64,000 nucleotides of DNA, from assembly GCF_037042905.1 (NCBI RefSeq), contig NC_087261.1:18662001-18726000 (forward strand), given 5' to 3'. Each line of letters opens with the position of its first letter. Positions within the stretch are counted from its first letter, which is position 1. Positions 8,283 through 62,590 of this stretch are shown here, piece after piece. The translations under genes and the position numbers were made by a program. This stretch comes from Lytechinus pictus (Eukaryota). The notes beneath the pieces were generated by a model. It searched no databases and was not told where the DNA came from. It was given only the letters and a program-made list of their open reading frames with translations.

Positions 8283-8434
8283 CACTGTACAAAATGAAGA
8301 ACTAACTTATGCTTGTATAGTGACTGCACTACGAGTGCTGATTTTCTAGTTTAAAATTTGAACTAGAAAATCAGCACTCGTAGTGCAGTCACTATACAAG
8401 TAAGTGCTAAATTAGCACTTCATTTTTTACAGTG
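8283..8434. mobile_element. Palindromic MITE with CACTG termini (CACTA/EnSpm-like)
   Basis: Termini CACTGTACAAAATGAAG / CTTCATTTTTTACAGTG with a 2-bp TSD CA. Perfect internal 40-bp inverted arms at 8312-8351 and 8361-8400. Confidence 0.8.
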
Positions 8435-10859
8435 CATTGACTTTTACCTCACCTTCACCATTGTACGCAACCAACAAAAACCGAACTTTTCAGTCAGGCG
8501 AGTTATTGGGTGAATATTTGACCTTCTTTTCATTTCAGATCAGGGAAATAGGATTACAGTTTTATGAATATATTTTCACCCTCTTTTGAATAAAACAGTG
8601 GGAGGACTGCCTAACCACAACCGCTGATAAACAGAAGTAATCACGTTCAAATTGAACCTTTTATTCGAAATCTTTTATTCATCAAATTTGATCGATGTCG
8701 TCCCATGTTCTTTAATGTACACAAAAAGGTATAAACTTCCAAGAACAAAAGTATGGTTTGCCATAAATAAGGAAATGTTTTGTGTTCATTTTGTGTTTTG
8801 AACAGAGCAATCATATTTATCCGAAATCGTTTGACCTTTTTTATTTTTTTTCATTCAGATCATATACAGGTTATACACAGCTGCACACGGAATAAAACGA
8901 AAATTTGTAACTTGACATGTTTTACCCGTTTCCATAAAGCCTTTAGCAGAGCCTATAGCTGAGCCTTTGTCCACCTGAAACAAACAGTTCAGCAGATCAG
9001 TGAGTCCGCATAGTCTCAAAGTTCAGACACCCAATGCAACCGTCCAATTCCGCAAGATATTTATTGTAAGCCATGCGCTATGGGAGGAGACACGTAATAT
9101 GCTGTGACATTCATTGTAATTAAGTGATGCATATCGAGTTAACGCTGGCTAGAAATCTGCCTCCGACTGATTAAATCAGACATTTTAATTTGATCATATT
9201 TCAAATCATCTTTTTCTCGTTCCCCCCCCCCCCCCCTCTTTTTGCGTGGGCTGGTCGGGAATACAAACTAAAGGGAAAGTGGAGAGATAGGGGATGGAGA
9301 TTTATCACCGGTAGTGTATAGATTACCGTAAGTGTAACGTTGTCTTCGACGCAGTGACATTTAAGGTGCTCTGCAGGTAAGGAAGAAATCGTGTCTCTTT
9401 ACAATGTTCGGAGAGTATGAAGATTCGCGATTGAAGGAAGTGTGAAAGAGGAAATATGAGAGGAAGTATAGACTAGATCAATCTATGTAATCTATTGTGC
9501 ACTCTCTCCCTCTATCTATCTCTCTTGCTTACTATCTCCCTCTTTCACATATCTATATTCCCGTCATGCAATGTACACTAGATAAAAAGATAGTATCGAG
9601 TTGCGCTGGTAAAATTGAGATTAGAGTGTCTTCACGTCGTCTTTCTCCCGGCCTTGTACATAATGTCACTACTGAATATCACCCACAAGCCTATGTAGAA
9701 AAAGAAAATACAGAGAGGACAGGGGATTGTGGAAGCCTGGCTCTTTACGCGAAAGAGAGGAAGGATGAAATTGTACCTACAGTATGCGCGTATGGTCGTT
9801 TTCTATGTGTGAAGTCACTATCCCGTACGGATAGAAAATACAACATAGATAATATATTGTAAAAGAAGAAGAAAAGGAATTCAGGGTATACGCGTTTAAT
9901 CGTGCAAGGGCTAAACCATAGTGTATTATGCTCGTATTCTGCTTGTGAAAGATTTTTAAGTTGAAAGAGCGTATCAAATATTTGCGTAAATATTTTGGTT
10001 TGTACGGAATATCGTTGAAGAATCAATCTAAATACTATGAGCCTTTACTACTTAAACATGTTAAAAGGAGGTTTGATTGAAGCGGAAGTTGGCCGCTGTG
10101 GTTTTGAAATGAATGTTTATTCAGAATTGACGAGACGAAATCTTAAATGTCTTTGTTATATGGAGAATCACCTAGGCAGTATATATCTTCCCATCGCTTC
10201 TTCAATTTATGCGTTTAAGGGAAGACATGGGAGGAAAGAAAGGGGTTGATTTAAGATAGATTATCTCAGAGTCGACCGCAACTGGCGTTTGATTATTGGC
10301 AAAGTAGTGTGCGGGATTCAAGCCCGCCTGGGCCGAGAGGCGCTCATTAAGGAGACGGCAATATGCACGATGGCGATGCATTTACTTGCGGAGCAGGTTT
10401 GAAAATAAGCATGGGGATTGGAGAGGGAGAGAAAGAAAAAGAGAGAGGGAGAATCGGGGAGAGTGGTTGAGTGAAGCAGATTGCCTTCAAATACGCCACA
10501 CGCTCCACAGCGTGCCTCATTTTGTCGCCGGTCAGTGTTCGCGCATGAGATGGTGTTTCTTGGAGCGTGGCATTCTACTGCCTTCTTAGACGTTTCTTCT
10601 CCGGCGCGCCCATCGTTCCCGTATCACCATACCAGACAGCCATATCGCTGCTGCCTGCTTCAGGTAGTGAACGGGGAAACGCTTTGCAGGCCTCTCCCAA
10701 CGGTTAGAACTCCATCTCATATTACACACATACGCTTGCATCGACCAATCACCACGGCTTACTAACTCAAGCAGTATATTTTTTCCTCCATTTTCAACTC
10801 GCTTTATCTTTTCTCTCTTTCCCTTGCTCTTCACATTTCTGTCTTTTTTCGTCTTTCAG

Positions 10860-11607
10860 ACGTCGTGAATTTTAATCAAGTACGCACCTGCTCGCCTAAG
10901 GGGTGAAATTTACGTCCGTCGATTTCCAAGCGAAGGCGAGCTGAACGAGAGTGAAGCACAAGCGGAGGAGACAAGGGGGAAACGGCTTTCTCTTTTGCAT
11001 AAAGGACGACATTCGATTAGGAGAGTGGGTGTGTTTTCCCCATCTCTTAGTTTGGTTCTGTGTTTCTGATGGTGCGGAATACGAATGCAGATGAGCTTTC
11101 TACTTCTCCATACTCGCGGTCGATGTTTCATGGAGACCCTCTTAGGGTAATGCATAAAAAGGGAAATCTGCATTCTGCATGCATGTCTTGCATATTGAAG
11201 TCCGTGTCGCCGAGCCTCGAATGGACTACTATTCACGTCATTCAATGACGTAAGACTCGGCCGGGCAGTAATGGTTTGTTCTTTCGGTGCATTACGGAGA
11301 ATCCCAGCTGCCTATTTTATGAAGACAAGGAAGAAGAAAGAAGACGAGTTGTGCATCTAAAATACCATCGCTGTGTATGAGATAAAAATGCTAGGTACTA
11401 GCAATATTCTGAGGAGAAGAGGACTGGAAATAGACAGTGGATTCTCTGCGGAACGAGAGGAGAAAACAAAACCACGGAATTTCATATCTAACAAAGATAA
11501 CACACAAACAGCAGACGACACTTTCACTTTATACATACAGGATGTATGTTCAGTTCGCCCGGCGCCAGATATTAATGGCGACCTACGAGTCCACATTACA
11601 CACCAAG
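10860..11607 (+). ncRNA. Putative non-coding exon of the pri-mir-124 host transcript
   Basis: Perfect branch point TACTAAC at 10760-10766, followed by an AG-free pyrimidine tract at ~10776-10857 and acceptor TTTCAG|A at 10859/10860. Donor AAG|GTTAGT at 11607/11608; upstream donor CAG|GTAAGG at 9376/9377. No credible ORF. Same strand as mir-124, 2 kb upstream of it. No transcript evidence is available. Confidence 0.45.
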
Positions 11608-13684
11608 GTTAGTATAGTTTCAGCATCGTGAATGTAATAGTGTAGGTTCTCTTTCTCGATTTCCCTCTCTCTCTCTCTCTCTGCTTCTTATTCTTCGCTC
11701 CCTTTCCCTCCTCTCCCTATCTCTACATCCACCCCGCTTCCATACGTCTGCGCACACACAATAAACCTCGCCATATGCTTTATCATGAATTCATAACTGT
11801 TCCATAAATAAATGAGTGTCAAGATTGCGTCATAAACGCCTGTTCTCCGAGTTTAATACGCAGGTTATAACGAACATGGAGCCATACAAAGGTACTAGTT
11901 CATTTTCCCCCTCGCTCCATCTTTTTAATGCGTTTTTCTGTAGCTCACAAACCGGGAATGGGTCGAGTGATTATATTGTTTGGATAGTGCATCGACGTGG
12001 AGAAAGCCGAAAGGAACATTATGTTGACATTTTGTGTCTTTGTTGAACCTCGGCTTTCGCCGGCTGGATGCGATGGTAGGGATGAAAAAGAGCCTATGAT
12101 TCATCATTTAGCGTTCTCTTTCCAGCGTCTTCATTAGTCATCATTGATTTCATGGCAAGATAGGTTGCCGCCATTGGGAGTGTTACTGACGTCTGTATTT
12201 TATTTCTATATTCAGTTTGTTCGAGCACAGTAGTGTGGCAATCCAGCATCGGTATATTCTACATTGGAGTTGCTTTTTTAGGGTTGATAAAAATCTTATT
12301 TCTGGTTGTGCCGACCACAATTACGGATTGATATACGTAAGTTGACAAATAGATCTTCTTTAACACCTATTTTCTATATCATTTTTTTGTAATTGTATTT
12401 TCCAGAATGAAAATAAGTGGGTGATTGGTTATACAAATAACATCTAAAATTGTATTCTTTCCCATTTTAAATGCGTATTTTGTGGATTTAAGAAGGTGTA
12501 TTCATTCACCTAACCATCTCTTTCATTGCATGTCGATTTCCTTTATTTCATTGTATATTGCCTTCGGTAATCTTGTGAAAGTCATATCCTAAATTTTGCG
12601 ATTTGAGACTATGAAAACCACAATTGTAACACATGTATTTACCAAATATTAAATTTTAGAAATTTATATTAAGAATAATGAAATACTGTGGTTTTAAAAA
12701 GAAGAAACACTAAACAGGGGAAATTAAGATTGGATTCAGATGTGGACAAGTTGGACTTAGTTTGGATTTCTAATCATGAAACGGAGACAATGTTCACAGT
12801 TTTCTACATTTTGATCCATTGCCGTGGTATAGCTGTTTATTATACAACGGGCCTTTTTTTCTTCCATTTCTTAATATTCACTATCTGGCGTCCGTCAATG
12901 CGCAATATTCGCTCGATTAATCCTTCAACCCGGAAGGCAGCCAACCTTCACGGCCTTGCAGTCCCGTGATCGCGAATTAGCATAAGAGCAAGAATGACAG
13001 AGAGAAAAGGATAATGAGAGCAAGTGCAAGGACAGTGGTATGAACGGGAAATCGTCATGGTTTCCCAATTCCCACCACAACCATGATGCTGAATTTCGTT
13101 TAACCGTACGATCATTTCGTATTTTCTCAGGCCATTGTCATGCACAATGCTAGTGGTGTTTGTTTTTTGGTCGAGCTAAGCACATCGCATCATCTGAAAT
13201 CGTTTATTGAGGATGATACATACATACATCTTTGATAATGCTTCCTTTTTTCTTTTGTTTTCCTCGACAGAATGATATAGATCGACGGATATTACTGGGA
13301 GAGAGTGAATTTCGAATATGTGGTAATACTTTACACTTGTTATTAATGAATTGACTTCAGTCAATATAGAGTGTGTGTGCCAAATATTACCACTATACTA
13401 AGTGCTGTACTATCCAGTGTGCATAACATCTGACTAAATGGATGTAAACCGACTTGGATTAACGTGAACTAGTATTCAGGCAATGTCTTATCAATGCTAT
13501 CAAATCACATGGCTTCCATGTGCCTTAAATGTGATATCTGCGATGGCTCATATTTTGTGTTTAGCAATGAAGTTTAGAAGACGCCATCTTAAAATTGCAA
13601 TATTGGAGAAACGGCGTTGTGTCAAATATCCAATAAACCATGGTACGATGACGTCATCACGGGTTTTCGCTGCTCCTACTTATC

Positions 13685-13769
13685 CATCCCGTTCTTAGTG
13701 TTCACTGCGATCCTTGATTTAAATTCTAAAACAATTAAGGCACGCGGTGAATGCCAAGGCTCGAGGATG
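13685..13769 (+). ncRNA. mir-124: microRNA mir-124 hairpin. Pre-miRNA ~13697-13757; mature 3p 13736-13757; star 5p 13697-13718.
   Basis: Exact bilaterian miR-124 mature sequence TAAGGCACGCGGTGAATGCCAA at 13736-13757. The upstream arm AGTGTTCACTGCGATCCTTGAT pairs with it (13698-13719 with 13733-13754, two central mismatches, 13-nt loop). Predicted Drosha and Dicer cuts give 2-nt 3' overhangs. Basal stem is CATCCCG/CGAGGATG; a CNNC (CATC) motif lies at 13776-13779. Confidence 0.97.
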
Positions 13770-15318
13770 AACTTTCATCCGGAATCGGCGGCTAACTTCA
13801 GTTGACATACGGGACATCGCTTTGAGAAGATCCCCGGATATACGAGGATTACTCACTCTTGTAAGAAACGGAAATTAATAAGTAATGCTTGGAATTCTTG
13901 GAATATTGAATAATTTATGTATTAAAATAGGGAATGACAATGCATTGTAATTGTTGGGTATTTAAGTAGGCATAATATTAAAAAAAAGAACATTAGGATC
14001 TTTTGAATTATGTATAATTCTGTGTTCGTGAAATAATAAAAACCTAATTAATGATACAGGTGATTAAGTTTTTTATGCACCTTGAAAATCACGCTTTCTA
14101 GCAATAGTTTTATTTTGTGCTTAATCTGATCCTAGGACCGCATTATTTACTTCAAGCATTAACCATTTAAAATGATTCACAGATTACTCTTCTAACTGTG
14201 CAAATAGTTTTCATTATCCGTCATTTATCAGCTTTTAATTATATATTCGATAGTATTATACTTGATAATTATACAGAGCAAACAAGATTTATCTTGTGCT
14301 CTTCTCTTAAGACATAGTAAATGTCTTGTTAAGTATCTCTGACTTTGTCATGAAAGTATATCCCCTGTAGAAATAGTTTATTACTTGTGTTGGTTACATG
14401 TATAAAGCCGCTAATGCCCCTTAACTAAGTTAACTATCGCTAGAACGAGGCAGTCACGATTGAGCAATTATTACCTCATGAAATATTAACTTTCATTGCC
14501 AGAAAGAATTGAAGTGATAACACATCTTAGTCTTGTACACCCAGAATGCTGACGTTGTTCAATACAAATTGCATTTAGGATTTTTTTTATGAAGTGCCGG
14601 TTCTTCTAAGTGATCTAGGTTTAGGGTTCAAAATTATTCTTGAAAAGTTTCTAGGGCTATTTTACTACTTCCATTAATGGTCAAACATATATTTTTGTCA
14701 TTAAAAGGTTGAGTAAAAAGACTTGAAACTTACCTTTTTTTCTAATAAAGAAATCGGTGAATATTTTTCAACCCTCCAACCTGTTACAATGCAAAATCAC
14801 CGAAACAAGTAATTTGATATTGTATAATAAAAAATACTTTCATTATTAATAATCAATAAAAGTAACCAAATAATACATCAAGATTGGCTTGTAACTTTTT
14901 TTTTCTTTTAGTCCAAATATTATTATGCTAAATGTGCTGGTAAACATGTATTCCACAGTGCTGGTGATAAAGAAAGTGACGTTGAAATGCGATGAGTCAT
15001 CACAGTAACTTTCTTTTTTTTTCCACAAATAAGTAAAATACAAAACATATAACTCATTTCAAAATAGTATAACTGATTACAATAAGTATAAACCAAAAAC
15101 GATATACAATCTTGAGCGCTACATTTAAAAGTGGGTGGACCTAAAACAAAACAAAAGTTTGTTGTGGATAGGCCCTTAACAAATATATGCACAATCATTA
15201 ACAGCTGGAAAGAAAAAAAATAGAGCAGAGCTCGGAGAAAGTATCAGAACTGCACAAAGACGAAAACAAGAAATGGTACAAACAACATGGATACACGGAT
15301 TAATAGACAATACAAATC

Positions 15319-15783
15319 GCCCTTTCACACGGTACCAAAATCGTAATTTGAATGATAATTCCAGTGAAAAATCATTGTAATGACGATTTTTTAGCACGTG
15401 TGAAACCAAACTAGAATCACGAACGCTAATTACAATCTCGAATTCAAATTCTATTCCGTAGGTGAATTCCAGTTAAGTTTCACTCACGGTACGAATTTTA
15501 CGTCTGAAAGGGTTGACCTCCAAACAACTTTTAAAGGGCAGAGCTTACGTGACCTTTCAAGCACTTCCGTAGAAAATACAATTGTCATGCACCCATGTTT
15601 TTTTTTTTTGCGACGCAGTGCTTTGATTTGGTTTGATTGACCAAGGACACAATACCGCCTTCGCTTAGGAATTCGAATTAAAATCACGGTTTTCGAGTGA
15701 ACGTGTGAATGGTACAATGATTCTAAAGACGAATTGCAATAATCATTACAATGATGATTCAAGATTCTCGTGTGAAAAGGCCC
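15319..15783. mobile_element. Non-autonomous DNA transposon (MITE), family A, copy 1
   Basis: TIRs GCCCTTTCACAC / GTGTGAAAAGGCCC. Colinear reverse-complement homology along its full length to 25961-26441. Confidence 0.8.
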
Positions 15784-17400
15784 AAAGAAACAAAAATGCG
15801 TATTGACAATGTACGAAGGATCATTCACATTTAAGTCAACCAAAGGAATATTTTCAAATGTCACTACCAGCTCCAGAAGCAGATTCTAGTATTACATGTT
15901 CATGTTGAGACGCTCATTATGCTCTCGTTCATGACGATCGGGGGCCGATGGAGTTGAATAAAATAGTATCTGTCATCTATTTTATTATATACAGTATCTA
16001 CCTTTGCCTCGGTTGGAATAATTTGTAAACTTCGATCTAGAAAACTGAAATAAGAACATTAACGTGATTTTCCCAACGTTTAATATTTTAATCACACGTA
16101 GGCTACACGCAAACACGTGCAGTATTCTCATCTATGCTTTGTATGATATAACAATGCTACTCACCCATGTTTTTTTTTACAATCTTTCGATATATTTGGG
16201 ATGGTTGGTGATACAGATTTGTACCGGCTTTGTAGACATTTCGCAAGCCTTTAAGAAATTTGATATAGGTCCCTATTGTCATTTCTTATGTCCGTACACT
16301 GCAAGAACTTTACATGGAAGCTCTTGAAACGTTTAAAGACCACACGCACATGACAAAAATATATCTCTAGTCAGTTCCCAGGTGGCACGGAACTTGAATG
16401 GACTCGATGAGATCAGTTGCCTAATCCGCAAGGTATCAAAGACAGTATCTGGTAACCTAGGAAGGGCTCTACTGCAGAAGCCCTTGGGAAGTTATCTTGG
16501 ACATGAATGGATATTTTGATAAAATTTTGTTTCCTTCTTTAGACATAATGGTTGGAAAAACATGTAGTCGTTTCATTCCACGTGCTCTTGCAATCACGTT
16601 CACTCGAGCTACAGCAAGAATGCTGCATCTCGCAAACATCCATTGCTAATTTCATGTTGTTTTTTCTTGAGATCCCCTAATACGAAAAGTGAATTTCGAA
16701 ACACAACAAACGGATTTGTATTGATTCCTATCGGGTTTCCCCCTCGTGAAATTACAAAATGACAAAATAAATTGCACGGAAATTATTGGTAATCACTGTA
16801 AACATCTTGGGGAATGAAAACCACAGAATAACAACGTTCAAAAGAGAAGTCGATGAAGATTGTTAATAGATCTGAACACTGGTGTCCATATAGGGGGTGG
16901 ACATGGCCTCAAAACGTTTCTTGTCCAAGAAAAAAAAAACGCAATTTCAATTTCAACCAATGAAATACGATTATTTAGGGTTTCGGCTTATTTATTTAGG
17001 TGTGTTTTTAAGAGTTATTTCTGCAACGGGCATCTTCGTGGCTATACGCAATTTGTTTTCTCTAAAGAAGCAGGACGCGTAAACTGGAAAGCGAGGAAGT
17101 GGTGCGACCGAGCTCCCCATTGTGGCGCTTTTGCTTATTGTAATGTGAAATTGAAGATTTCGTGAAGAATTTTGGTAAATAGTGTGAAAATTTTCAGTAA
17201 AAAGTATAAGTTTTAGAATAAATTTGGGGGTTGCAACTGCAACCCGCTGCGTACGGCCAAGAGCACCTGGAAATCAATTGAGATACTTTGACCTATTATC
17301 TTTTATCCGAAGGCGAATTTCAGAAGTATCATTGCCCGAATCCTGATCCATCCCTTCGTTCAAATTTTTTACTATTCTTTGAAATAATGCAGTAGACTCG

Positions 17401-17403
<3 letters not shown>

Positions 17404-17436
<33 letters not shown>
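17404..17436. repeat. (TA)n microsatellite
   Basis: Directly visible. Confidence 0.95.
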
Positions 17437-17440
<4 letters not shown>

Positions 17441-18628
17441 CATGAGAAATTGAATTAAACAATGAGAGTAGAAGAATTTATAATGATGCTAGTCAGGGAC
17501 TGCAGAACGATTATGAAATTATGAGGGGGTGTGCCGAGAAGGGGAAGGGGGGCTGAACATTTAACAACAAAAATCACAATCAGATGATAATGTTTGCCTT
17601 TCGGTCCACATTTGTCTATTTAAATGTGTGGAATATTTTGTCCACTAACAACTCCTCGAACTTATACTTGTTATTTATTTCCAATAAAATGATGATAAAA
17701 TAAAAGGAAATAAATCAGACATAACTATTGTAATTAAGATTTTTATAAGCAATTTTTCTCAGTGAGTATGGTCTGTCGAACTGTGGAATCTGAAAGATTA
17801 TTGGGGGGGGCTTACCATGCAAAAGGCACAGTCAATTAATAATTTTTAACGTTTTGTACACGTGTATTAATATAAATACGAGGAGAGGGACTGGGACACC
17901 CTAGCCCCCGGATCCACCTTTCGGAAAATGAAATGTCGTTCATAAGGTATCACCGCCTCTGAGCAAAAAATTAAAAAAGGCATTAAGTTTTGAGGCATCT
18001 ACTCTTGCAAGAAGAATTCAAAAGTGAATAGGAAATGGCTTAAATAAAACGCTTACACGGAAGTGTAATACGACATGAATTAACACACGTTAGAATGTTT
18101 ATAGTAGACGAATGAGGCATGGTTACAATATTTAGGTGGGTTTTAATGCTTCTTTTCCTTTTCAATGGGAGGTTTAAACTATAGGATGATGGACGGAAGT
18201 TACGTTCCAGATGAAAAAAAAATCTGGAATTATAATGCAATTTTATAAAGGTATTTCTCTGAACATGGCATCTGGAATACTGTAATTTCTATTTTACCGC
18301 AGTCTGGAAGCCGGCATATTTTTCCTATTACAATTATATGATCAATATTGAAGAACAATTTTGTATTAGGGGCTACATTAAAGACTTTGCATTGAAATCA
18401 TAAACAGGTCTTTCTTTAATCATTAAGAAGTGGGGTTTTTTATTCACCTGCATTGCATGCAATCAATACATGATGTAGGGCTTGTGCCCCTGCAACCTGT
18501 CACACCATAGATATTTTTGCATATTTTGGTAACAGACAAAGAAAATAATTAGATGGGAAAATTTTAGTAAGTTTGTTATACAATGACCGACGGACATGTT
18601 ATTATAGCAAGGCGCTTGCTATTTCAGG

Positions 18629-20702: not shown

Positions 20703-22379
20703 TTAGAGACGTCACTGCGAACCGATGAGGCATCCCAGACGGTTCACCGAGACGTATACGCGAATTCTAAAGAAACCGATTTGACAACTGATTTGGAAGA
20801 TTTGCATTATTCCGGTGAAACAGTTCTAGGATATGTGTTCATGAATTGTTTATTTTATGTTATGTATTGTTCTTTGTATACCAACAGGCGAAATACTATT
20901 TTCATGCCAAGGTAATTTCTTTTTATTTTGAGCATGACAATAAATTTTGAATATCTGAATATCTGAGTGGCAACGCCATGAACGCGTTTGTGAGATCCGG
21001 ACTTCTGTACATCTGCACACTCAAGTTCTAAAATAAAAAAAGTTAATAAAATAGAGAACGTCGTCTATCAATTATTGTCTGCTTAGGCATTTGAACCAGC
21101 TGAAAAGCAGAGGATTTTTTTTTAATTCAGGAATTCTTCCTACTCGATTCTTAGAGAGTAACAATATGGCATTATGTGAGAGGGTCGTACATCAGAAGTA
21201 GTTCTCAACGGTAATCGGATTATTGACAGGAGCCATTTTTAACTTTCACTATTCATTTCCGATGTTCATCCGTGATCAACCCCGAGTTCGTCGATCTTAT
21301 TTATCATTCGACCAGGCCCTTGAGGGCGGTCCGTGCCTCACGAGCAATTGTAGTTGTCAAATGTAGACGAGCGTGATTTTACTGCTCTCTTCTTGTTTCA
21401 TTATCTGATTTTAATTCGCTTGATTGTTGCCGACAGATATTTCACAGGAATGACAAGAAAGAATGTGGGGGCATTTTGTGTTGATGTCATGCAAAGGATA
21501 CATGCTTGATCGCCAGTGGTAACATCCAATGTGACACAGACACATGGCGGATTTGACAAAATTCATTCAGCAAAAAACAAGAACAATTAATCTTTTTATT
21601 GCATTAACATAGTCCATTTCAAAAAGGGATCCCGTTCACTTTTTTAAATGTTAGAAATACAAACCTCTGTTTATCAGATTCTGTGCATCCAAATAGCGAA
21701 ATAAAAGACCAAGCATTACTCTAGATTTCTCCGTTTGTTAAATGACTATTGTTGACATGTCCCCTTTTCGATTTTTTTTTATAATATTTATTTGTTTTCT
21801 ATATTAATTCAAAAAGTCAAATTAAAAAAAAAATCACTTCAATATTTAATGTGGACGTAAAGTCGTTTTCATTTTGGTTATGCGTTATTATGAATGTGTA
21901 TTAGTTTAATATTTGAAGCGGGAACTTGGCAGGACATTTGACTTACCCAAACAAGATATTAAAAGATGAGATAGACAAATCAATTCAACTAGCAAACCAA
22001 TTCAATAAGAAGAAAAAAATAAAATTCACTCAAAAACAAAAATATAGGTTTGATTTTTCTGTATTTGTATTTTAGTGTTTCCTTATACTTTCCTTCCAAA
22101 GTTAAACTTGTATAACTTTTTTTTTCTGGTATCTTTATCTGTTCTAATTGTACCTTCTCTCCCATTCTGTAATACTTCCTTTCCATCCCAGGGTCTTTTC
22201 TGATCTGTTCTGTGTCGATTTTACTTTTCAGCTTGATTTAATTCACTTTGTGTGTTCTTATTATCATTCTGTTTTAGGTCCACTTCAAATCTGCTCGACT
22301 TTTTTCTTTCTTTATATTTGTTATGAATATCCATTTTCTTTGTTTTACACTTTTTTTTATTCTAGGTCTCTTTTCTACC

Positions 22380-24913
22380 ATGACTAACCATCTATCTTTA
22401 TTTCACCAGCTCAGGAAGATCAAGCTGAAGGCCCTCAAGATCTCTGTTCACCAGGACAATTACATAATTTATTACCTCAATCGCATTATACCCACAGGCC
22501 TCCAACTCCATTGCACTCCCGGTCTCGGTACGCTCTCACCTGAACTTCGCAAACGCTGGAACCAGACCTTACATGGAGCTTCAGTTCGACTAAATAACAT
22601 TCTCTCTGAACAGTGTGTTGCTTCTCTTGATTCTCTTTCAGCTGACATCAGTAGCCTTGGAGACGAACTACGTTCTTGTTGTACCCACACCCAGTGGCTT
22701 CAGTATATGATGAAATTGAATCTGATCTCTCTAAACACAGGTCTCTCCTCACTGAACGCAGGAACAAGAAAATAGGCAACCTCACAAAGAAGCGACAACG
22801 GTCAAACAGATTTAGACGACATACCAACAACAATGATGCATCCCCCCATTTGGTTGTTAATCTCTCATCCTCCCCTCTCTCCCAAGCAGAAACCTCTCTT
22901 CTCTCTAAAGGGCTCAAGTTTCGCAGGACACGTCTCAAAGAGTTCTTTTTAGATGCACCCCCTTCTGATCCCGAGCCCTTCTACAAGAAAAGCACATGGA
23001 CTCCACCCAAGAATAGAGTTCCTTCCCTTGAAACTTACATTCAAGCTGTCTCATCCCAAGTTCGCTCCACAGATACCCTCGACATCAGAGCACATGACAA
23101 CCTTCCTCGAGAAGAACGCCAGGCTCTCTCATCACTCAAAACAGGTCCGACATCATCATCAAGCCTGCAGACAAATGATCAGCCGTCGTCGTTATGGACC
23201 GCCAGCAGTACATCGATGAAGCCATGAAACATCTCAATAATCAATCTCACTATGCACTCCTCGATTCTGACCCTACTTGTAATTTCTCCCTACAGATCCA
23301 ATCGACACTGAATGACATGAAAGAACACAAGCATCTCTCCGAGAAGGCCCACAAATTTTCCTTTAACTTTTACTAATGCTACACCGGCCCACTTCTATCT
23401 CCTCCCCAAGATCCACAAACCTGGCAACCTCGGTCGACCCATCCTCTCAGGAAATGGTTCCCCAACAGAGAACATCTCCCTCTTTGTTGATTACCACATT
23501 AAACCCCATGTCTCACGTGCACCCTCTTACATCCACGACACTCCAGACTTTCTCAGGAAACTAAACGACATCAAGGACCAGATACCCGAGACTGCGATCA
23601 TCGGCACTTTCGATGTTTCTTCACTGTACACCAACATTCCCCACGATGAAGGTATCCAAGCATCATGTGAAGCCTTGGCCGCCAGTGGCCATTCCAGTCC
23701 CCCCATATCCGATATCAAATCTCTGATGTCTCATGTACTAACGAAAAACTTCACATTCATGGGCAAGCACTACCTACATATATTCGGTACAGCAATGGGC
23801 ACCCGGATGGCTCCTTCATTCACCTGTCTCTTCATGACCAAGCTGCAACAGCAGATGTTAGATTCAGCCCCCTGTCGCCCATGGATTTAGTGGCGTTACA
23901 TAGACGACAATTTCTTCATCTGGACCAGGGAGGAAGATAGCCTCCATACATTCATTGACCACATCAATTCCTTCCACAGGACCATCAAATTCACTTCTGA
24001 TTTCTCCCAACAGGAAACCCACTTCCTTGATGTCACAGTCCAGAAAAAGCCTAATGGTATCACCACTAACCTGTACACTAAACCCACAGATACCACCAGT
24101 ACCTCCACCCATCCAGCTGCCACCCCCGTCACTGCAAAACCGGCATCGCTTACAGTCAATCACCCTCAGACTTCGCCGCATCTGCTCCGAGGACCCTGAT
24201 TTTTCCCTCCATGCCAGGAATTTGAAGAGACATCTCTGAAGATCTGAAGTTCTCAAACCACAAAGTGAAAAGGAGACTGACAGAATACCGCTTTTGACCG
24301 CCTTCCATCCCAATCTACCCCCTCTCCGTAAAATCCTGTGTGATAACCACCACATTTTACACACTTCTGATCGTCTCCAACAGGCCGTTCCCGATACTCC
24401 TCTCCTAGCATACCGACGCCCACCCAATCTCAGGGACCTCATTGTTCGTGCTGAAGTGCCCTCCCCCACTAACCATTCGTCTCTCACACAGCATGGCACC
24501 TTCAAATGTACCAGCAACAGGTGCATCATATGTGAAATACACATTCACGAGGGCGACACTTTCACCAGCAACTCTACCAGCCATTCTCACCAAACTAAGG
24601 GCAACATCACATGCACTACCACTAATGTTGTATATCTCATCACTTGCAGAGTTTTTAGGGTACACTACATAGGGGAAACCAAGACCACACTCAAGAAACG
24701 ATTCTACGGGCACAGATCAACCGTCAACACAGCAAAGCTGGACACTCCAGTTGGCCGCCATTTTAACCTTCCCAACTACTCCATCACTGACATGATGCTA
24801 CAGGGCATCGAATCTTTAGGTACCCGCCCTGACTCAGTCCGTACTAGCAGAGAGAAGTTCTGGATGAGACGACCCAACCTCATGGCCTGAACATCCAAGA
24901 GGGGAACGACTGA
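22380..24913 (+). pseudogene. PLE polyprotein pseudogene: N-terminal domain, reverse transcriptase, Cys-rich linker, GIY-YIG endonuclease
   Basis: Motifs recovered across frames: IIPTGL, VVNLSSSPLS..LLSKGLKF, FYLLPKIHKPGNLGRPI, FDVSSLYTNIPH (~23609), GTAMGTRMAPSF, WRYIDD (YIDD at 23897-23908), FLDVTV, LYTKPTD, LRLRRICS, YRRPPNLRDLIV, CTSNRCIIC, VVYLITC..HYIGET (24627-24681), RFYGH, GLNIQE. Multiple frameshifts, in-frame stops (e.g. TAG at 23888) and short deletions. Confidence 0.95.
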
Positions 24914-25306
24914 TTAGTCTTTTCCATCCACTTTCTATATATATATATATTTTTCCACCCTCAGCTCTTTTTAGATTAGTTATATTATAGTTTCTTCCTC
25001 TATTTTCCTCAGCTCCTATTTTTGCTTTCCACACTCAGGCGATATAATAATTTTTTTTTTTCATATATTTTTTCTCCACTCACCTCTTTTAGATTTACTA
25101 CATATTTATTTTGTTTAGTTACATGTATACTATAGTTTCTTCGTATACATTCCACCTCTCTCATATAACCTAAGCTTCTATATTTACTCTACCCTTTTAG
25201 GCAATATGCTTCTCCTTTTTTATATAAACATGTCTTATTTCTACTATATAGTATTATGGTATTTTCCCCTCACCCCTCGCGGATTTACAATACTAGTTAC
25301 ACAATA

Positions 25307-25341
<35 letters not shown>

Positions 25342-25775
25342 ATTATTTTTTTTTTGCTTTATCATTTATACTTATATGTCTTTTGCACATTATCAGTTGT
25401 TCCCCTTTCTTTCCTATTTTCCCCACTCTTATGCACCAGTTTATTATGCCTTTCTGTGTTACCTGTTTGACCCACCTCTCACTAATTCTCTTGTTATTCA
25501 TCTCTTCCTCATACCTCCTATCACTGTTTTGTTCCAGATCCTGTTTGATGTTGCCTGCCCAATTATCTTAATCCCTCACAGCTTAAGGTCTTTTACTGGC
25601 CTTACTTAAACTAACTTCCCTTTGTGTCTGCCTACTCCTTTGCTTTCATCCCCTTCTCTAACCTGATTGGTCATCACAACTCTCTAATGCCCTTTTTGTC
25701 TTCTTGTTTCTAGTGTTGCTGTTGTATGTATATGGTCTATATTGTGTTTGTTCCACTTTATATGTTTGTCATTTT

Positions 25776-30926: not shown

Positions 30927-33122
30927 GCGATAGTCCACGCGTGTCTTTGATTTGTTCGCATCAGCGTGACTGTAGTTGCTGCAACCAAAAGAAATAGCAA
31001 AAAAGTAAGGCAAGCAAGAGGGATGCGTTAAGGAAATGCTCATTTGTTTAGCATAAGCATTAACTTGCTCATGCATTTTGGTAGACGTAAGGTAGCATAT
31101 GCTTCAGGTTTGAACAATATTGGTCGCAGCGAGCAACCCTTTATTATCCATGAAGGTCTGGTAGAGAAAAGATGGGCTAGAACATGTTTTTCTTTTTATA
31201 TGAAAACCTTGCAGCTTCTGGTACATGTATGTCAAGTGATCCATTTATTATCAACTTATTCACCTTAGTTTTGCAGAAATTTAATTTTGGTTATCGTTTG
31301 GTATGTTTTAAGAAATTTTGCACTCAATATAAGCGCATGTTTTTGCGAAGTTTTTTTCTATTTCGAAAGTCAATCCTTCCCTTTTCCCCCACAGTGTTTA
31401 CATGCAAATTTCACATACTTTTAGCCATTTGTATCCATTTTCAATTTATTTGCCATATTTGACCAAATTGATATTATATATAAATTAATGTGTTTTCTTT
31501 CGTTCAAATGTCCCATCTGTACTTCAATTCAGGGATATCCTTTATATCCCAATTCATCATTAGGTGATTTTGCGTATTTTTTTTAAAGTAATGTTTGTTT
31601 TAATCCATGTCATGTTTCTTATTTTGAGGCTTTTTTGCTATCAGAAATAAAATCGTCTTACAGGTCTATAAATAGATTTATCATTCTATTATTCAATCAT
31701 TCAATCTACCCATCTATATATCAATAAATCAATCAATCAACCTGACATTCAATCAATCAATCAAACAAAGACCGAGTTCTAATCACTTTCGCTCCGATGG
31801 AAACTACAACGGGTCTGCACTCACAGACTACATCCAGATGAAAAACACACCATGCGCATATCATTATCAGCATACGTCCCGTGGCGTGTTTGGTATATAT
31901 GGTGACGCCAATTCTGCCCCGATGTATATGGCATGGGATGGTTTCTCTATCATCTACAAGATAATAAAGACAAGAGGTTAGAAGATATATATTACACACA
32001 TCTCTTTCGTAACAATATTCTCCATCTCTTTCTAGCCTTACGCCTATGAAGGTGGAAAATGCATATTCCCGAGAGAATATTCAGCATTTCAAAGCTATCT
32101 ATCGACGGGACTTAAAGATAGAAAATGAATTCGTATATTGCTCTCTGACTGTGCCTTAAATCTTAAAAGACGTAGTAAATTATTTTACCTATACTCAAGA
32201 GAATGACATTACCAAAATCAGGCCATTGACTTTTTTAATAGTCATGTAGATTAGAGCCATAATTCTATTTCTCATCATTGTCACTTTTAACGCTTTTCAT
32301 AAATCGGCATTATATTTTTTTAGATTGTGTACTAATCTTAATCATTCCTCTGAAAGAATATCGGTTCACAATGATGAGTGGCATATCAAAATTGCATATT
32401 ATCCCATGTACGTGACTGTATACATTAATGCCAAATCATTTTGTTTGTTTTAATGAAGGGATTTTTTAGTGCATTTACTAGTTTGAGCCTATTGATCGGA
32501 AAGTGTACGCCAATGTATCATTATACAATTTAGTGTTAAATTATGAAAATACATGTCTTCATCTACCATAGTTTTTATTGTGATTTCACACAGCCAACTC
32601 AAAATCTAAATTAGTATGTTCAGGCGATCGTCCTAGCCTATGCAAGCTAATCATGTATATACGCTTGGTCTCTTTAGCCTTGAACTATAATTATTTTAGT
32701 GCATTTTATGCTCTACCACTCATCAAAATTACTAATTCAGGGCACAGATTCTGAATAAACAAACTGGGATGCCGCGTGAAGTTGAGAGAAAAGAGCTCCA
32801 GAGAGAAAGGAAGAGAGGGGGAGGGATGGGAAGGGGGAAGGGGCTAAAGAAGAAGTAGAAAGAGAAAGATAAGAAGAGAAGCAGAGGTTTGCGTGCGTGT
32901 GCGTGACGGTGTGGGTGCGTGTTAAGGTGTGTGTATATGCGCGTATGTCACATAAAGATTGGGTTAGTGTGAGTGTGTGTGTGTGTGTGTGAGAGAGAGA
33001 GAAAGAGAGGTAATGAAGAAGGAAGCGGCGCAATGCTAACGGAATCTGTGGGGCTTGAGCTTCGTACGTTTATTACAAAAAAATGTGTTATATGGTCCTG
33101 CACTGGCAATGAAAAGGCTATA

Positions 33123-33518
33123 TCTATGAAGTAAAGAGTGCCCATGACTAGATAACTGACGGTTGAGATTAATTATAACAGTGATGTGACGCAAGGCTGC
33201 AAAGTTGCACCGGCTCTATTAAAAAAATTTCATAGAAGTTTTGCTTAAGCTTGCAGCCTCCCCGTTTGCTTTGACCTTTGCAGACTGAAAGCTCAGAAAA
33301 AGATCAGGGCCCAGCTGCATGTCTATGAAGTAAAGAGTGCCCATGACTAAATAACTGACGGTTGAGATTAATTATAACAGTGATGTGACGCAAGGCTGCA
33401 AAGTTGCACCGGCTCTATTAAATAATGTCATAGAAGTTTTGCTTAAGCTTGCAGCCTCCCCGTTTGCTTTGACCTTTGCAGACTGAAAGCTCAGAAAAAG
33501 ATCAGGGCCCAGCTGCAT
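33123..33518. repeat. Near-perfect tandem duplication of ~198 bp
   Basis: 33123-33320 is repeated at 33322-33518 with only a few differences. Confidence 0.95.
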
Positions 33519-37340: not shown

Positions 37341-37545
37341 TTTATATTTGAGATCAAGAATATGGAGAGGGCCGTAAGAAGGTCAATACCAGTCTTAATC
37401 AAGCTTTCGGGCACATGCCCTTCATCAGGATCTAAACCAATATATAAAATACAAAATATAGGCCTACTAATAACAATGATAAATACAATACAATGCAATA
37501 TATAATTGCGTTAAGCAATTATATTCCATTTCTAATAACCAAATA

Positions 37546-56417: not shown

Positions 56418-56784
56418 NNNNNNNNNNNNNNNNNNNNNNNNNNNNNNNNNNNNNNNNNNNNNNNNNNNNNNNNNNNNNNNNNNNNNNNNNNNNNNNNNNN
56501 NNNNNNNNNNNNNNNNNNNNNNNNNNNNNNNNNNNNNNNNNNNNNNNNNNNNNNNNNNNNNNNNNNNNNNNNNNNNNNNNNNNNNNNNNNNNNNNNNNNN
56601 NNNNNNNNNNNNNNNNNNNNNNNNNNNNNNNNNNNNNNNNNNNNNNNNNNNNNNNNNNNNNNNNNNNNNNNNNNNNNNNNNNNNNNNNNNNNNNNNNNNN
56701 NNNNNNNNNNNNNNNNNNNNNNNNNNNNNNNNNNNNNNNNNNNNNNNNNNNNNNNNNNNNNNNNNNNNNNNNNNNNNNNNNNNN
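56418..56784. other. Assembly gap (N run)
   Basis: Run of n, flanked by simple repeats. Confidence 1.
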
Positions 56785-58514: not shown

Positions 58515-59163
58515 ATATTTGTGACCAACCACCCCCAAACCACCAATAAGTCTGCCGGGAAGAATATCTGTCAATGGCCAAAATAGTAAATTGGTCTTCA
58601 AAGAGCCAAAATTCAAAACTCCGTTTGTCTGAAGGAGTATTTCTTCATCTTTATACTGTAAAAAAAATCGAGTTGTAAAATCAAATAGAAACAAGACACA
58701 AGAGTTTCTTTGACACAAGTTTTTCATGTTTTTGCAGACTGCTAGGAAGTTTCATTGAAATCGCACCGTGGGCACATCTAATTATTGAGTGTATACAAAC
58801 TTTAAACGTTATTTTCTCTCTGCATTCAATCAAGTATTTGAGTAGGTTATTGTTGATTAAGTTTGACAAATTATATATCACTTTTAAAGCTTAGGATGTT
58901 TGTCTAAACTTAATAAATATTTCAAATTCGTTTTGAGTAGGCTATTGTTGATCAAGTTTGACAAATTATATATCACTTTTAAAGCTAAGAATGTTTGTCT
59001 AAACTTAATAAATATTTCAAATTCGTTTTGAGTAGGCTATTGTTGATCAAGTTTGACAAATTATATATCACTTTTAAAGCTAAGAATGTTTGTCTAAACT
59101 TAATAAATATTTCAAATTCGTTTTGAGAGACTTGTTGGTTTTGGGGTGGCTGGTCACATTTAT
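58515..59163. mobile_element. Non-autonomous DNA element containing an internal 95-bp tandem array
   Basis: TIR ATATTTGTGACCAACCACCCCCAAACC / GGTTTTGGGGTGGCTGGTCACATTTAT. Confidence 0.75.
58837..59127. repeat. Three tandem copies of a 95-bp unit
   Basis: TTTGAG(TAGG) recurs at 58837, 58932, 59027 and 59122. Copies 2 and 3 are essentially identical. Confidence 0.95.
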
Positions 59164-60875: not shown

Positions 60876-61039
60876 NNNNNNNNNNNNNNNNNNNNNNNNN
60901 NNNNNNNNNNNNNNNNNNNNNNNNNNNNNNNNNNNNNNNNNNNNNNNNNNNNNNNNNNNNNNNNNNNNNNNNNNNNNNNNNNNNNNNNNNNNNNNNNNNN
61001 NNNNNNNNNNNNNNNNNNNNNNNNNNNNNNNNNNNNNNN
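60876..61039. other. Assembly gap (N run)
   Basis: Run of n, flanked by simple repeats. Confidence 1.
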
Positions 61040-62203: not shown

Positions 62204-62590
62204 GGTAATTTGCAAATTCGTCCACCCACCACATAGTCTAACTTTATTTAGTCAAATGCCATTCCGTCCATCAACATTTCGTCTAACAACCATTTGGTCC
62301 AATCATCACTTCGTCTACTCACCATTTGGTCTTTGACCATTTCGTCTCATAACCAGTTGGTCTAATACTCGTTTTATTTTCATTCATTTGCCCAAGTAAC
62401 ACTTAGTCTAATTAGATCAAATGGTACATGGACTAAATGGCTATTGGACCAACTGGTTATTAGACGAAATGGTGGGTGGACGAAATGGCAATTAGACCAT
62501 GCGGATTTTGGATGAACTGATGGTAGACCAAATGATAGTAGACAATTTGGCAATTGGATGAATTGGCATTGGACCAAGTGAAAATAAACC
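62204..62590. mobile_element. Foldback element built from inverted arrays of ~15-bp subrepeats
   Basis: Left half repeats CCATTT(C/G)GTCTAA; right half repeats TAGAC(G/C)AAATGG. Ends GG...CC. 8-bp TSD GAACTAAT / GAACTAAC at 62196-62203 and 62591-62598. Confidence 0.8.

What the first reader, a model, noticed from the sequence alone, without database searches (positions are those of the whole stretch)
13685..13769. A mir-124 gene, invisible to the ORF track, is the only clear host gene in 64 kb
Seen: an exact mature miR-124 in a well-formed hairpin with correct Drosha/Dicer geometry and a CNNC motif. Established: miR-124 is the conserved pan-bilaterian neural microRNA. Inference: the gene-poor window around it is probably the regulatory domain of the pri-mir-124 transcription unit.
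Basis: partly seen in the sequence, partly recalled or inferred. Interest (0 to 1): 0.7.

Follow-up and report, generated by a model that had tools for sequence, protein, structure and literature searches.

The report
Sea urchin mir-124 microRNA gene
This is the genome's single copy of mir-124, the deeply conserved nerve-cell microRNA already described in sea urchins, so the call is correct but ordinary, and nothing here shows how much of the surrounding gene-poor DNA regulates it.

Summary
Window 13690-13762 (+) matches Rfam mir-124 (RF00239) at 72.4 bits against a cut-off of 49. The 23-nt miR-124 sequence sits exactly at 13736-13758 on the 3' arm. The hairpin folds at -38.6 kcal/mol (z -4.3) with a ~35-position stem, a 13-nt loop and 2-nt overhang geometry.

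It is the only mir-124 in this 812-Mb genome, and its flanks are single copy. Earlier scan notes call the genome a sea urchin, and an exact match to the urchin-specific miR-2002 supports that. miR-124 is already catalogued and functionally studied in sea urchins, so this is known biology.

Two details are weaker than claimed. The CNNC sits at +18 only if Drosha cuts after 13758, and has about 8% chance odds. The lowest 5 bp of the basal stem compete with a small downstream hairpin.

"Gene-poor" is crudely supported. Across 174 kb, the 30 longest open frames scanned gave Pfam matches only to a decayed retroelement.

The "regulatory domain" inference remains untested. Three raw RNA-seq runs show zero depth over 6 kb. 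One run's contigs cover a single-copy 1-kb block 2.3-3.4 kb upstream, a candidate promoter or exon. The scan's only other note on this stretch is this same finding.

The parts
13685..13769 (+). pri-mir-124 hairpin from basal junction to basal junction (about 35 stem positions plus a 13-nt loop)
   Evidence: MFE fold, (-38.6 kcal/mol, z -4.27). Pair table. Upper stem pairing probabilities 0.93-1.0 in four sequence contexts; the lowest 5 bp only 0.19-0.53.
13690..13762 (+). Match to the Rfam mir-124 precursor model RF00239 (full length 1-72)
   Evidence: 72.4 bits against a gathering score of 49, E 8.4e-15. It is the only such match in the 811.7-Mb genome. The antisense strand scores only 33 bits and folds less well (z -2.39).
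13736..13758 (+). Mature miR-124-3p (23-nt form). The 21-nt form 13736-13756 is identical to published spu-miR-124.
   Evidence: Exact match, 0 expected by chance. spu-miR-124 is 21 nt and sko-miR-124 is 22 nt in the PMC3247247 supplement. It is the only exact 20-mer in the genome.
13696..13718 (+). Predicted 5p (star) arm. The 5' end is at 13696-13698, depending on where Drosha cuts; the 3' end at 13718 leaves a 2-nt overhang opposite U13736.
   Evidence: Inferred from the pair table. 19 of 22 positions equal the Rfam consensus 5p arm. No small-RNA reads were available.
13720..13732 (+). Apical loop, 13 nt, with no UGU/GUG motif
13776..13779 (+). CNNC (CATC) in the 3' flank: +18 from a cut after 13758, +20 from a cut after 13756. 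It lies inside the alternative small hairpin 13765-13780.
   Evidence: Sequence. Background CNNC frequency 0.041 per position. The canonical position is 17 or 18 (bioRxiv 10.1101/102921). Alternative pairing.
10304..11348 (.). Tentative: a single-copy, non-coding, GC-richer block 2.3-3.4 kb upstream. It is a candidate promoter, first exon or accessible element of the mir-124 unit.
   Evidence: It is the only sizeable part of 9201-15200 recovered in run X1's contigs (887 and 209 nt, depth about 5, about 97-98% identical). It is single copy in the genome. It has no ORF over 133 aa and no Pfam hit. GC is 0.43-0.49 and CpG o/e 0.96-1.14. X1's molecule type is only guessed, and the three raw RNA-seq runs do not cover the block.

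Best explanation
This is the single, functional mir-124 gene of a sea urchin.

Inferred pathway, from the established canonical route: an RNA polymerase II primary transcript folds into the 13685-13769 hairpin. Drosha/DGCR8 cuts about one helical turn above the basal junction, near 13695/13696 and 13756-13758. The resulting pre-miRNA of about 61-63 nt is exported. Dicer cuts next to the 13-nt loop, at 13718/13719 and 13735/13736. The 3' arm, starting at U13736, is loaded into Argonaute as miR-124-3p (seed AAGGCAC) and represses mRNAs that carry GUGCCUU sites.

In S. purpuratus the same miRNA is enriched in the larval ciliary band and directly represses Notch and NeuroD1.

Shown here: sequence identity, family membership, fold, arm geometry, single-copy status. 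Inferred: every processing step and expression from this locus. The transcription unit is most likely a stand-alone non-coding one with control elements within a few kb, lying in a transposon-littered gene desert.
For: - Rfam RF00239: 72.4 bits against a cut-off of 49, full-length model.
- Exact 23-mer with 0 chance expectation. The first 21 nt equal the published spu-miR-124 (also the probe table in the PMC11076791 supplement).
- Hairpin z -4.27. The miRNA duplex region pairs with probability 0.93-1.0 in every context tried. Geometry fits a ~35-position stem with 2-nt overhangs (the ~35-nt stem rule is cited in bioRxiv 10.1101/2021.08.03.454879).
- The sense strand folds better than the antisense (Rfam 72.4 against 33 bits).
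- One copy per genome: one Rfam match and one exact 20-mer. The two 2-mismatch 20-mers have no mir-124 fold.
- Flanks 13400-14100 are single copy, unlike the foldback repeats elsewhere in the window.
- The genome also holds one exact copy of the urchin-specific miR-2002, which fits the earlier notes that this is a sea urchin.
- Since urchins express miR-124 and this is the only locus, it must be the source.
Against: - No expression evidence from this locus. Three raw RNA-seq runs (about 12.9 million records read from each, roughly 25% of each run) give zero depth over 9201-15000. Their tissue is unknown, and pri-miRNAs are short-lived.
- No small-RNA reads could be laid, so both arm ends are predictions.
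- Basal UG and apical UGU motifs are absent, and the CNNC position depends on the assumed cut site.
- The lowest part of the basal stem competes with a downstream mini-hairpin in silico.
- "Single copy" depends on the assembly being complete.
Confidence: 0.95

Rival explanations
1. One reading: the whole gene-poor window (tens of kb) is a dedicated cis-regulatory landscape for pri-mir-124, kept free of genes by that constraint.
For: - No coding signal or other RNA gene in 174 kb around the hairpin.
- A single-copy block 2.3-3.4 kb upstream shows up in one run's contigs.
- In S. purpuratus and L. variegatus, predicted factor sites up to 10 kb upstream of miR-124 overlap ATAC-seq signal (PMC11076791).
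Against: - Much of the window is transposon debris and dispersed repeats: a Penelope-like remnant at 22.3-25.6 kb, repeat pairs at 15.3-15.8/26.0-26.4 kb, 20.3-20.7/54.3-54.8 kb and 29.0/49.5 kb, and foldback repeats at 8.3 and 62.3 kb.
- The apparent excess of CRE sites is only the genome-wide rate.
- In Drosophila, 4.2 kb upstream drives the correct pattern and 19 kb rescues.
- No conservation or chromatin data were available here.
Confidence: 0.25
2. The hairpin lies in an intron of a long host gene (protein-coding or spliced lncRNA) whose exons are short or lie outside the region examined, and is co-transcribed with it.
For: - ORF scanning cannot see short exons.
- Another first-stage note proposes a spliced host lncRNA at 9371-11740.
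- The X1 contigs over 10304-11348 could be an exon.
- SpmiR-1 was mis-annotated as intergenic and proved intronic (PMC11076791).
Against: - The 30 longest open frames in 174 kb gave no Pfam domain other than transposon remnants.
- No splice joints appear in any run (table 5).
- Known mir-124 loci, such as mouse RNCR3 and the fly locus, are non-coding units of their own.
Confidence: 0.15
3. A silent relic or chance look-alike: the hairpin is not processed into miR-124, and the expressed copy lies in unassembled sequence.
For: No reads from the locus in the three RNA-seq runs. The basal stem is partly unstable in silico.
Against: - Both arms and the internal-loop positions are intact relative to the family model.
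- The mature sequence carries zero substitutions.
- It is the only copy in a chromosome-scale assembly.
- A 23-mer match has no chance expectation.
Confidence: 0.02

Closest known systems
spu-mir-124 / SpmiR-124 and LvmiR-124 (sea urchin mir-124 as catalogued in miRBase and Echinobase)
   Same: The mature sequence is identical over the published 21 nt. It is a conserved miRNA in an echinoid genome. In S. purpuratus it is enriched in the larval ciliary band and represses Notch and NeuroD1. The upstream 10 kb has already been mined for factor sites and ATAC overlap.
   Different: I could not obtain the published precursor sequences or this genome's species name. Whether this is the very same annotated locus or its orthologue in another urchin is therefore not shown. 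The published site distances could not be matched to this window.
Drosophila mir-124 (single locus)
   Same: One copy per genome, the same mature sequence family, and its own transcription unit with neural expression. 4.2 kb upstream recapitulates expression (PMC3276548).
   Different: From my own recollection, not tested here, the fly 5p arm differs far more from the Rfam (vertebrate-like) consensus 5p arm than this one does. Here 19 of 22 5p positions equal that consensus.
Mouse miR-124a-1 / RNCR3 non-coding precursor
   Same: The hairpin is carried by a dedicated non-coding transcript of a few kb (PMC9418502). The hairpin shape and both arms closely resemble this one (Rfam consensus).
   Different: Mammals have three paralogous loci; this genome has one. 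No transcript has been demonstrated here.

Membership tests
mir-124 (Rfam RF00239 / MirGeneDB Mir-124) | Mature 3p sequence with seed AAGGCAC, identical or nearly identical to UAAGGCACGCGGUGAAUGCC | tested here: met
   Exact 23-mer at 13736-13758. It equals spu-miR-124 (21 nt) and sko-miR-124 (22 nt) from the PMC3247247 supplement.
mir-124 (Rfam RF00239 / MirGeneDB Mir-124) | The precursor scores above the curated covariance-model threshold in sequence and structure | tested here: met
   72.4 bits against a gathering score of 49, model positions 1-72 of 72, E 8.4e-15.
mir-124 (Rfam RF00239 / MirGeneDB Mir-124) | The mature strand lies on the 3' arm of a stable hairpin | tested here: met
   z -4.27, and duplex pairing probability 0.93-1.0.
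canonical (Drosha/Dicer) animal miRNA gene | Stem of about 35 positions, single-stranded flanks, and 2-nt 3' overhangs implied at both cuts | tested here: met
   About 11 positions of lower stem plus about 24 of upper stem and a 13-nt loop. Caveat: the lowest 5 bp have pairing probability 0.19-0.53.
canonical (Drosha/Dicer) animal miRNA gene | Processing motifs: basal UG at -14, apical UGU, CNNC at +17/+18 (helpful, not obligatory) | tested here: inconclusive
   UG and UGU are absent. CNNC is at +18 only if the cut follows 13758, with about 8% chance expectation (positions).
canonical (Drosha/Dicer) animal miRNA gene | Small-RNA reads from both arms with precise 5' ends and 2-nt offsets | not testable with these tools
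   No small-RNA raw reads were offered. The one read-laying run used long RNA-seq and gave zero depth at the hairpin.
mir-124 (Rfam RF00239 / MirGeneDB Mir-124) | Neural expression | not testable with these tools
   Known for S. purpuratus from the literature only (ciliary band). Nothing was measured for this locus.

The most novel reading that the evidence does not exclude
The single-copy 1-kb block at 10304-11348 is the promoter or first exon of a stand-alone pri-mir-124 non-coding RNA. In addition, the 10-bp palindromic CRE (ATGACGTCAT, 13647-13656) about 30 nt upstream of the hairpin base, next to a CCAAT at 13630, makes mir-124 transcription respond to CREB/ATF. This would close a feedback loop with a miRNA known in Aplysia to repress CREB1.
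Probability: 0.12. Interest if true: 0.35.

Novelty: already known. Interest (0 to 1): 0.1.

Why it matters
It matters little beyond annotation. The result pins the only mir-124 locus of this urchin genome to C17:18,675,685-18,675,769, which an ORF-based gene track cannot see. It also gives exact coordinates for knock-out, reporter or small-RNA mapping work in a system where miR-124 function is already under study. The gene-desert setting and the upstream single-copy block are starting points for finding the still undescribed urchin pri-mir-124 promoter.

Tried and rejected
1. CRE enrichment. TGACGTCA occurs 5 times in the window against 0.67 in shuffles. The genome-wide rate is 56,106 sites in 811.7 Mb, or 4.4 per 64 kb, so there is no local enrichment. 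Rejected as support for a regulatory domain.

2. Paralogues. Two 20-mers with 2 mismatches (L005, L006) show no mir-124 fold, and the reversed control pattern also gave one hit. Judged chance.

3. Other "miRNA" hits in the window (plant MIR161, MIR2912, MIR2630, MIR7533; all below threshold). These are high-copy foldback repeats, not miRNA genes.

4. Expression. The single read-laying run gave zero depth from three raw RNA-seq runs. This is uninformative rather than negative.

5. Published precursor sequence. A text search for the 5p arm and for "spu-mir-124" found no precursor sequence.

6. Published factor-site distances for Sp and Lv could not be matched to this window, and the paper's supplement lists no CRE or CREB site.

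7. spu-miR-2007, as printed in one supplement (24-mer), has no match at up to 1 mismatch. A second paper prints a different spelling, so this says nothing.

8. Mismatched GHG motif. G-A-G with an unpaired A lies at 13763-13765, which is +5 to +7 from a cut after 13758. That is not the register given, so it is not claimed.

The N runs at 56418-56784 and 60876-61039 were left untouched.

Full report
**Observation**

The 23-nt miR-124 sequence lies at 13736-13758 on the + strand with no mismatch. There is no other match at up to three mismatches, and none in 100 dinucleotide-preserving shuffles.

A scan of the whole window against all 4,227 Rfam families gives exactly one hit above a curated threshold. 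It is mir-124 (RF00239) at 13690-13762 (+): 72.4 bits against a gathering score of 49, E 8.4e-15, covering the full model.

The energy is -38.6 kcal/mol, z -4.27, and none of 200 shuffles folds as well. The reverse strand folds less well (z -2.39) and scores 33 bits, below threshold. The + strand is therefore the gene.

**Anatomy**

From the pair table:
- U13736 pairs with G13716, so a Dicer product with a 2-nt overhang puts the 5p 3' end at 13718.
- The 3p 3' end at 13756-13758 puts the 5p 5' end at 13696-13698.
- The loop is 13 nt (13720-13732).
- The upper stem has a 1x1 mismatch and a 2x2 internal loop at the internal-loop positions of the Rfam consensus structure.
- About 11 further positions reach the basal junction.

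This fits the ~35-position stem rule for Drosha substrates, as cited in bioRxiv 10.1101/2021.08.03.454879.

- The only CNNC, CATC at 13776-13779, is at +18 only if the 3' cut follows 13758. With the 21-nt form cloned from urchins it would be at +20. The canonical position is 17 or 18. CNNC occurs at 4.1% of positions here, so it has roughly 8% odds by chance. The basal UG and apical UGU are absent.
- In partition-function folds of four context lengths, the miRNA duplex pairs with probability 0.93-1.0. The lowest five base pairs (13685-89 with 13765-69) reach only 0.19-0.53, because GGAUG 13765-69 can instead pair with CAUCC 13776-80. That small hairpin would also bury the CNNC. This is an in-silico caveat, not evidence against function.

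**Copy number and organism**

The window is G000:C17:18,662,001-18,726,000 of an 811.7-Mb assembly.
- The Rfam model finds one match in the whole genome, this one.
- The 20-nt core occurs exactly once. Two 2-mismatch look-alikes have no mir-124 fold, and the reversed control pattern also scored one hit.
- The 700 nt around the hairpin are single copy.

Earlier notes of this scan call the genome a sea urchin. I partly checked this. The 23-nt miR-2002, described as sea-urchin specific (PMC11076791), occurs exactly once in G000. Its sequence was taken from the PMC3247247 supplement.

**What is known**
- spu-miR-124 (21 nt) and the hemichordate sko-miR-124 (22 nt) are published and identical to 13736-13756/7.
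- In S. purpuratus the miRNA appears from the morula stage, is ubiquitous in blastula and gastrula, and is enriched in the larval ciliary band. It directly represses Notch and NeuroD1 (bioRxiv 10.1101/2021.12.10.471989).
- Upstream regions of SpmiR-124 and LvmiR-124 have been scanned for factor sites against ATAC-seq (PMC11076791).

The finding is therefore a correct rediscovery of a known gene.

**Mechanism**

The canonical pathway is inferred, not shown here. A Pol II primary transcript is cut by Drosha/DGCR8 about one helical turn above the basal junction. The product is exported, Dicer cuts at the loop, and the 3p strand is loaded into Argonaute to repress mRNAs carrying the seed match. 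Because urchins express miR-124 and this is the only locus in the assembly, it must be the source, provided the assembly is complete.

**Expression test**

No listed holder of the stretch is on record as RNA, and no small-RNA raw reads were offered. I laid three raw RNA-seq runs of 2026 and one older run's contigs on 9201-15200.

The raw runs give zero depth from 9201 to 15000, with about 12.9 million records read from each (roughly a quarter of each run). Their tissue is unknown and pri-miRNAs are short-lived, so this is uninformative.

The older run (X1, molecule type only guessed) has contigs of 887 and 209 nt covering 10304-11348 at about 97-98% identity and depth about 5, and nothing else of substance. 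That block:
- is single copy in the genome
- is non-coding
- is the most GC- and CpG-rich part of the neighbourhood

It is a candidate promoter, exon or accessible element 2.3-3.4 kb upstream of the hairpin. It overlaps a separate first-stage note that proposes a host lncRNA. No splice joints were seen.

**Surroundings**
- The window has no other gathering-level RNA family and no tRNA.
- Its 20 longest open frames give no Pfam hit except weak RVT_1 and GIY-YIG matches at 23321-24890, a decayed Penelope-like element.
- Frames that seem open at 56.2-56.9 and 60.8-61.2 kb are artefacts of N runs, which I left alone.
- Dispersed repeat pairs and foldback repeats are frequent.
- Eighty kb upstream and 30 kb downstream look the same. 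The longest stop-free frame is 197 aa, the ten longest frames give no Pfam hit, and there is one odd tRNA-like sequence.

"Gene-poor" therefore holds at this crude level over 174 kb, although short exons would escape the test.

Whether this desert is a regulatory domain cannot be decided here. An apparent five-fold excess of CRE palindromes disappears against the genome-wide rate of 4.4 per 64 kb. Precedents point to compact units: 4.2 kb upstream suffices for the fly pattern and 19 kb rescues the mutant, and a 4.5-kb deletion removes mouse RNCR3, the precursor of miR-124a-1.

**Verdict**

"mir-124 gene" is right. "Only gene in the window" is plausibly right. "Regulatory domain" is untested. 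Novelty: already known. Interest: low.

Noticed in passing
window 13630-13656: A 10-bp palindromic CRE/ATF site (ATGACGTCAT, 13647-13656) lies about 30 nt upstream of the hairpin's basal junction, with a CCAAT at 13630-13634. At the genome-wide rate of one TGACGTCA per 14.5 kb, a site within 100 nt upstream has under 1% odds, but I noticed it post hoc. It could be a proximal promoter or enhancer element.
   Followed up: partly
window 8310-8405: A perfect palindrome of about 45 bp (fold -93.8 kcal/mol, z -19). It belongs to a high-copy foldback (MITE-like) family: at least 89 scored matches and 1,187 candidates genome-wide. It causes the sub-threshold hits to plant MIR161 and MIR2912.
   Followed up: yes
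window 62300-62510: A long imperfect foldback (z -9.3) from another high-copy family with 2,148 candidates. It causes the sub-threshold MIR2630 and MIR7533 hits.
   Followed up: yes
window 22300-25600: A decayed Penelope-like retroelement on the + strand: weak RVT_1 (E 8.5e-4, 23321-23887) followed by weak GIY-YIG (E 2.7e-4, 24294-24890). It coincides with a strong negative GC skew.
   Followed up: partly
genome-wide (G000): TGACGTCA is about five times commoner than its reversed control (56,106 against 10,701 sites) and far above dinucleotide expectation. This suggests either a repeat family carrying it or genome-wide selection for it.
   Followed up: no
L011:8442-8515 (G000:C17:18,620,442-18,620,515): A tRNA-like sequence: Rfam tRNA at 44.8 bits. 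ARAGORN reports an undetermined tRNA with a 4-base anticodon, tcta. It is probably a pseudogene or a tRNA-derived repeat.
   Followed up: partly
window 37397-37433: Another first-stage note calls this a minimal hammerhead ribozyme inside a microsatellite. The permissive Rfam scan of the whole window (E up to 1) lists no hammerhead family hit.
   Followed up: partly
window 58837-59127 and 33120-33518: Short tandem arrays: a 95-nt unit in 3 copies at 96% identity, and a unit of about 199 nt in 2 copies at 97-98%.
   Followed up: no
window 8501-18500: A run labelled with a different organism code (X2, organism B) holds 25% of the sampled 31-mers of this 10-kb stretch. It is either a close relative with conserved sequence here or the same species under another label.
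   Followed up: no
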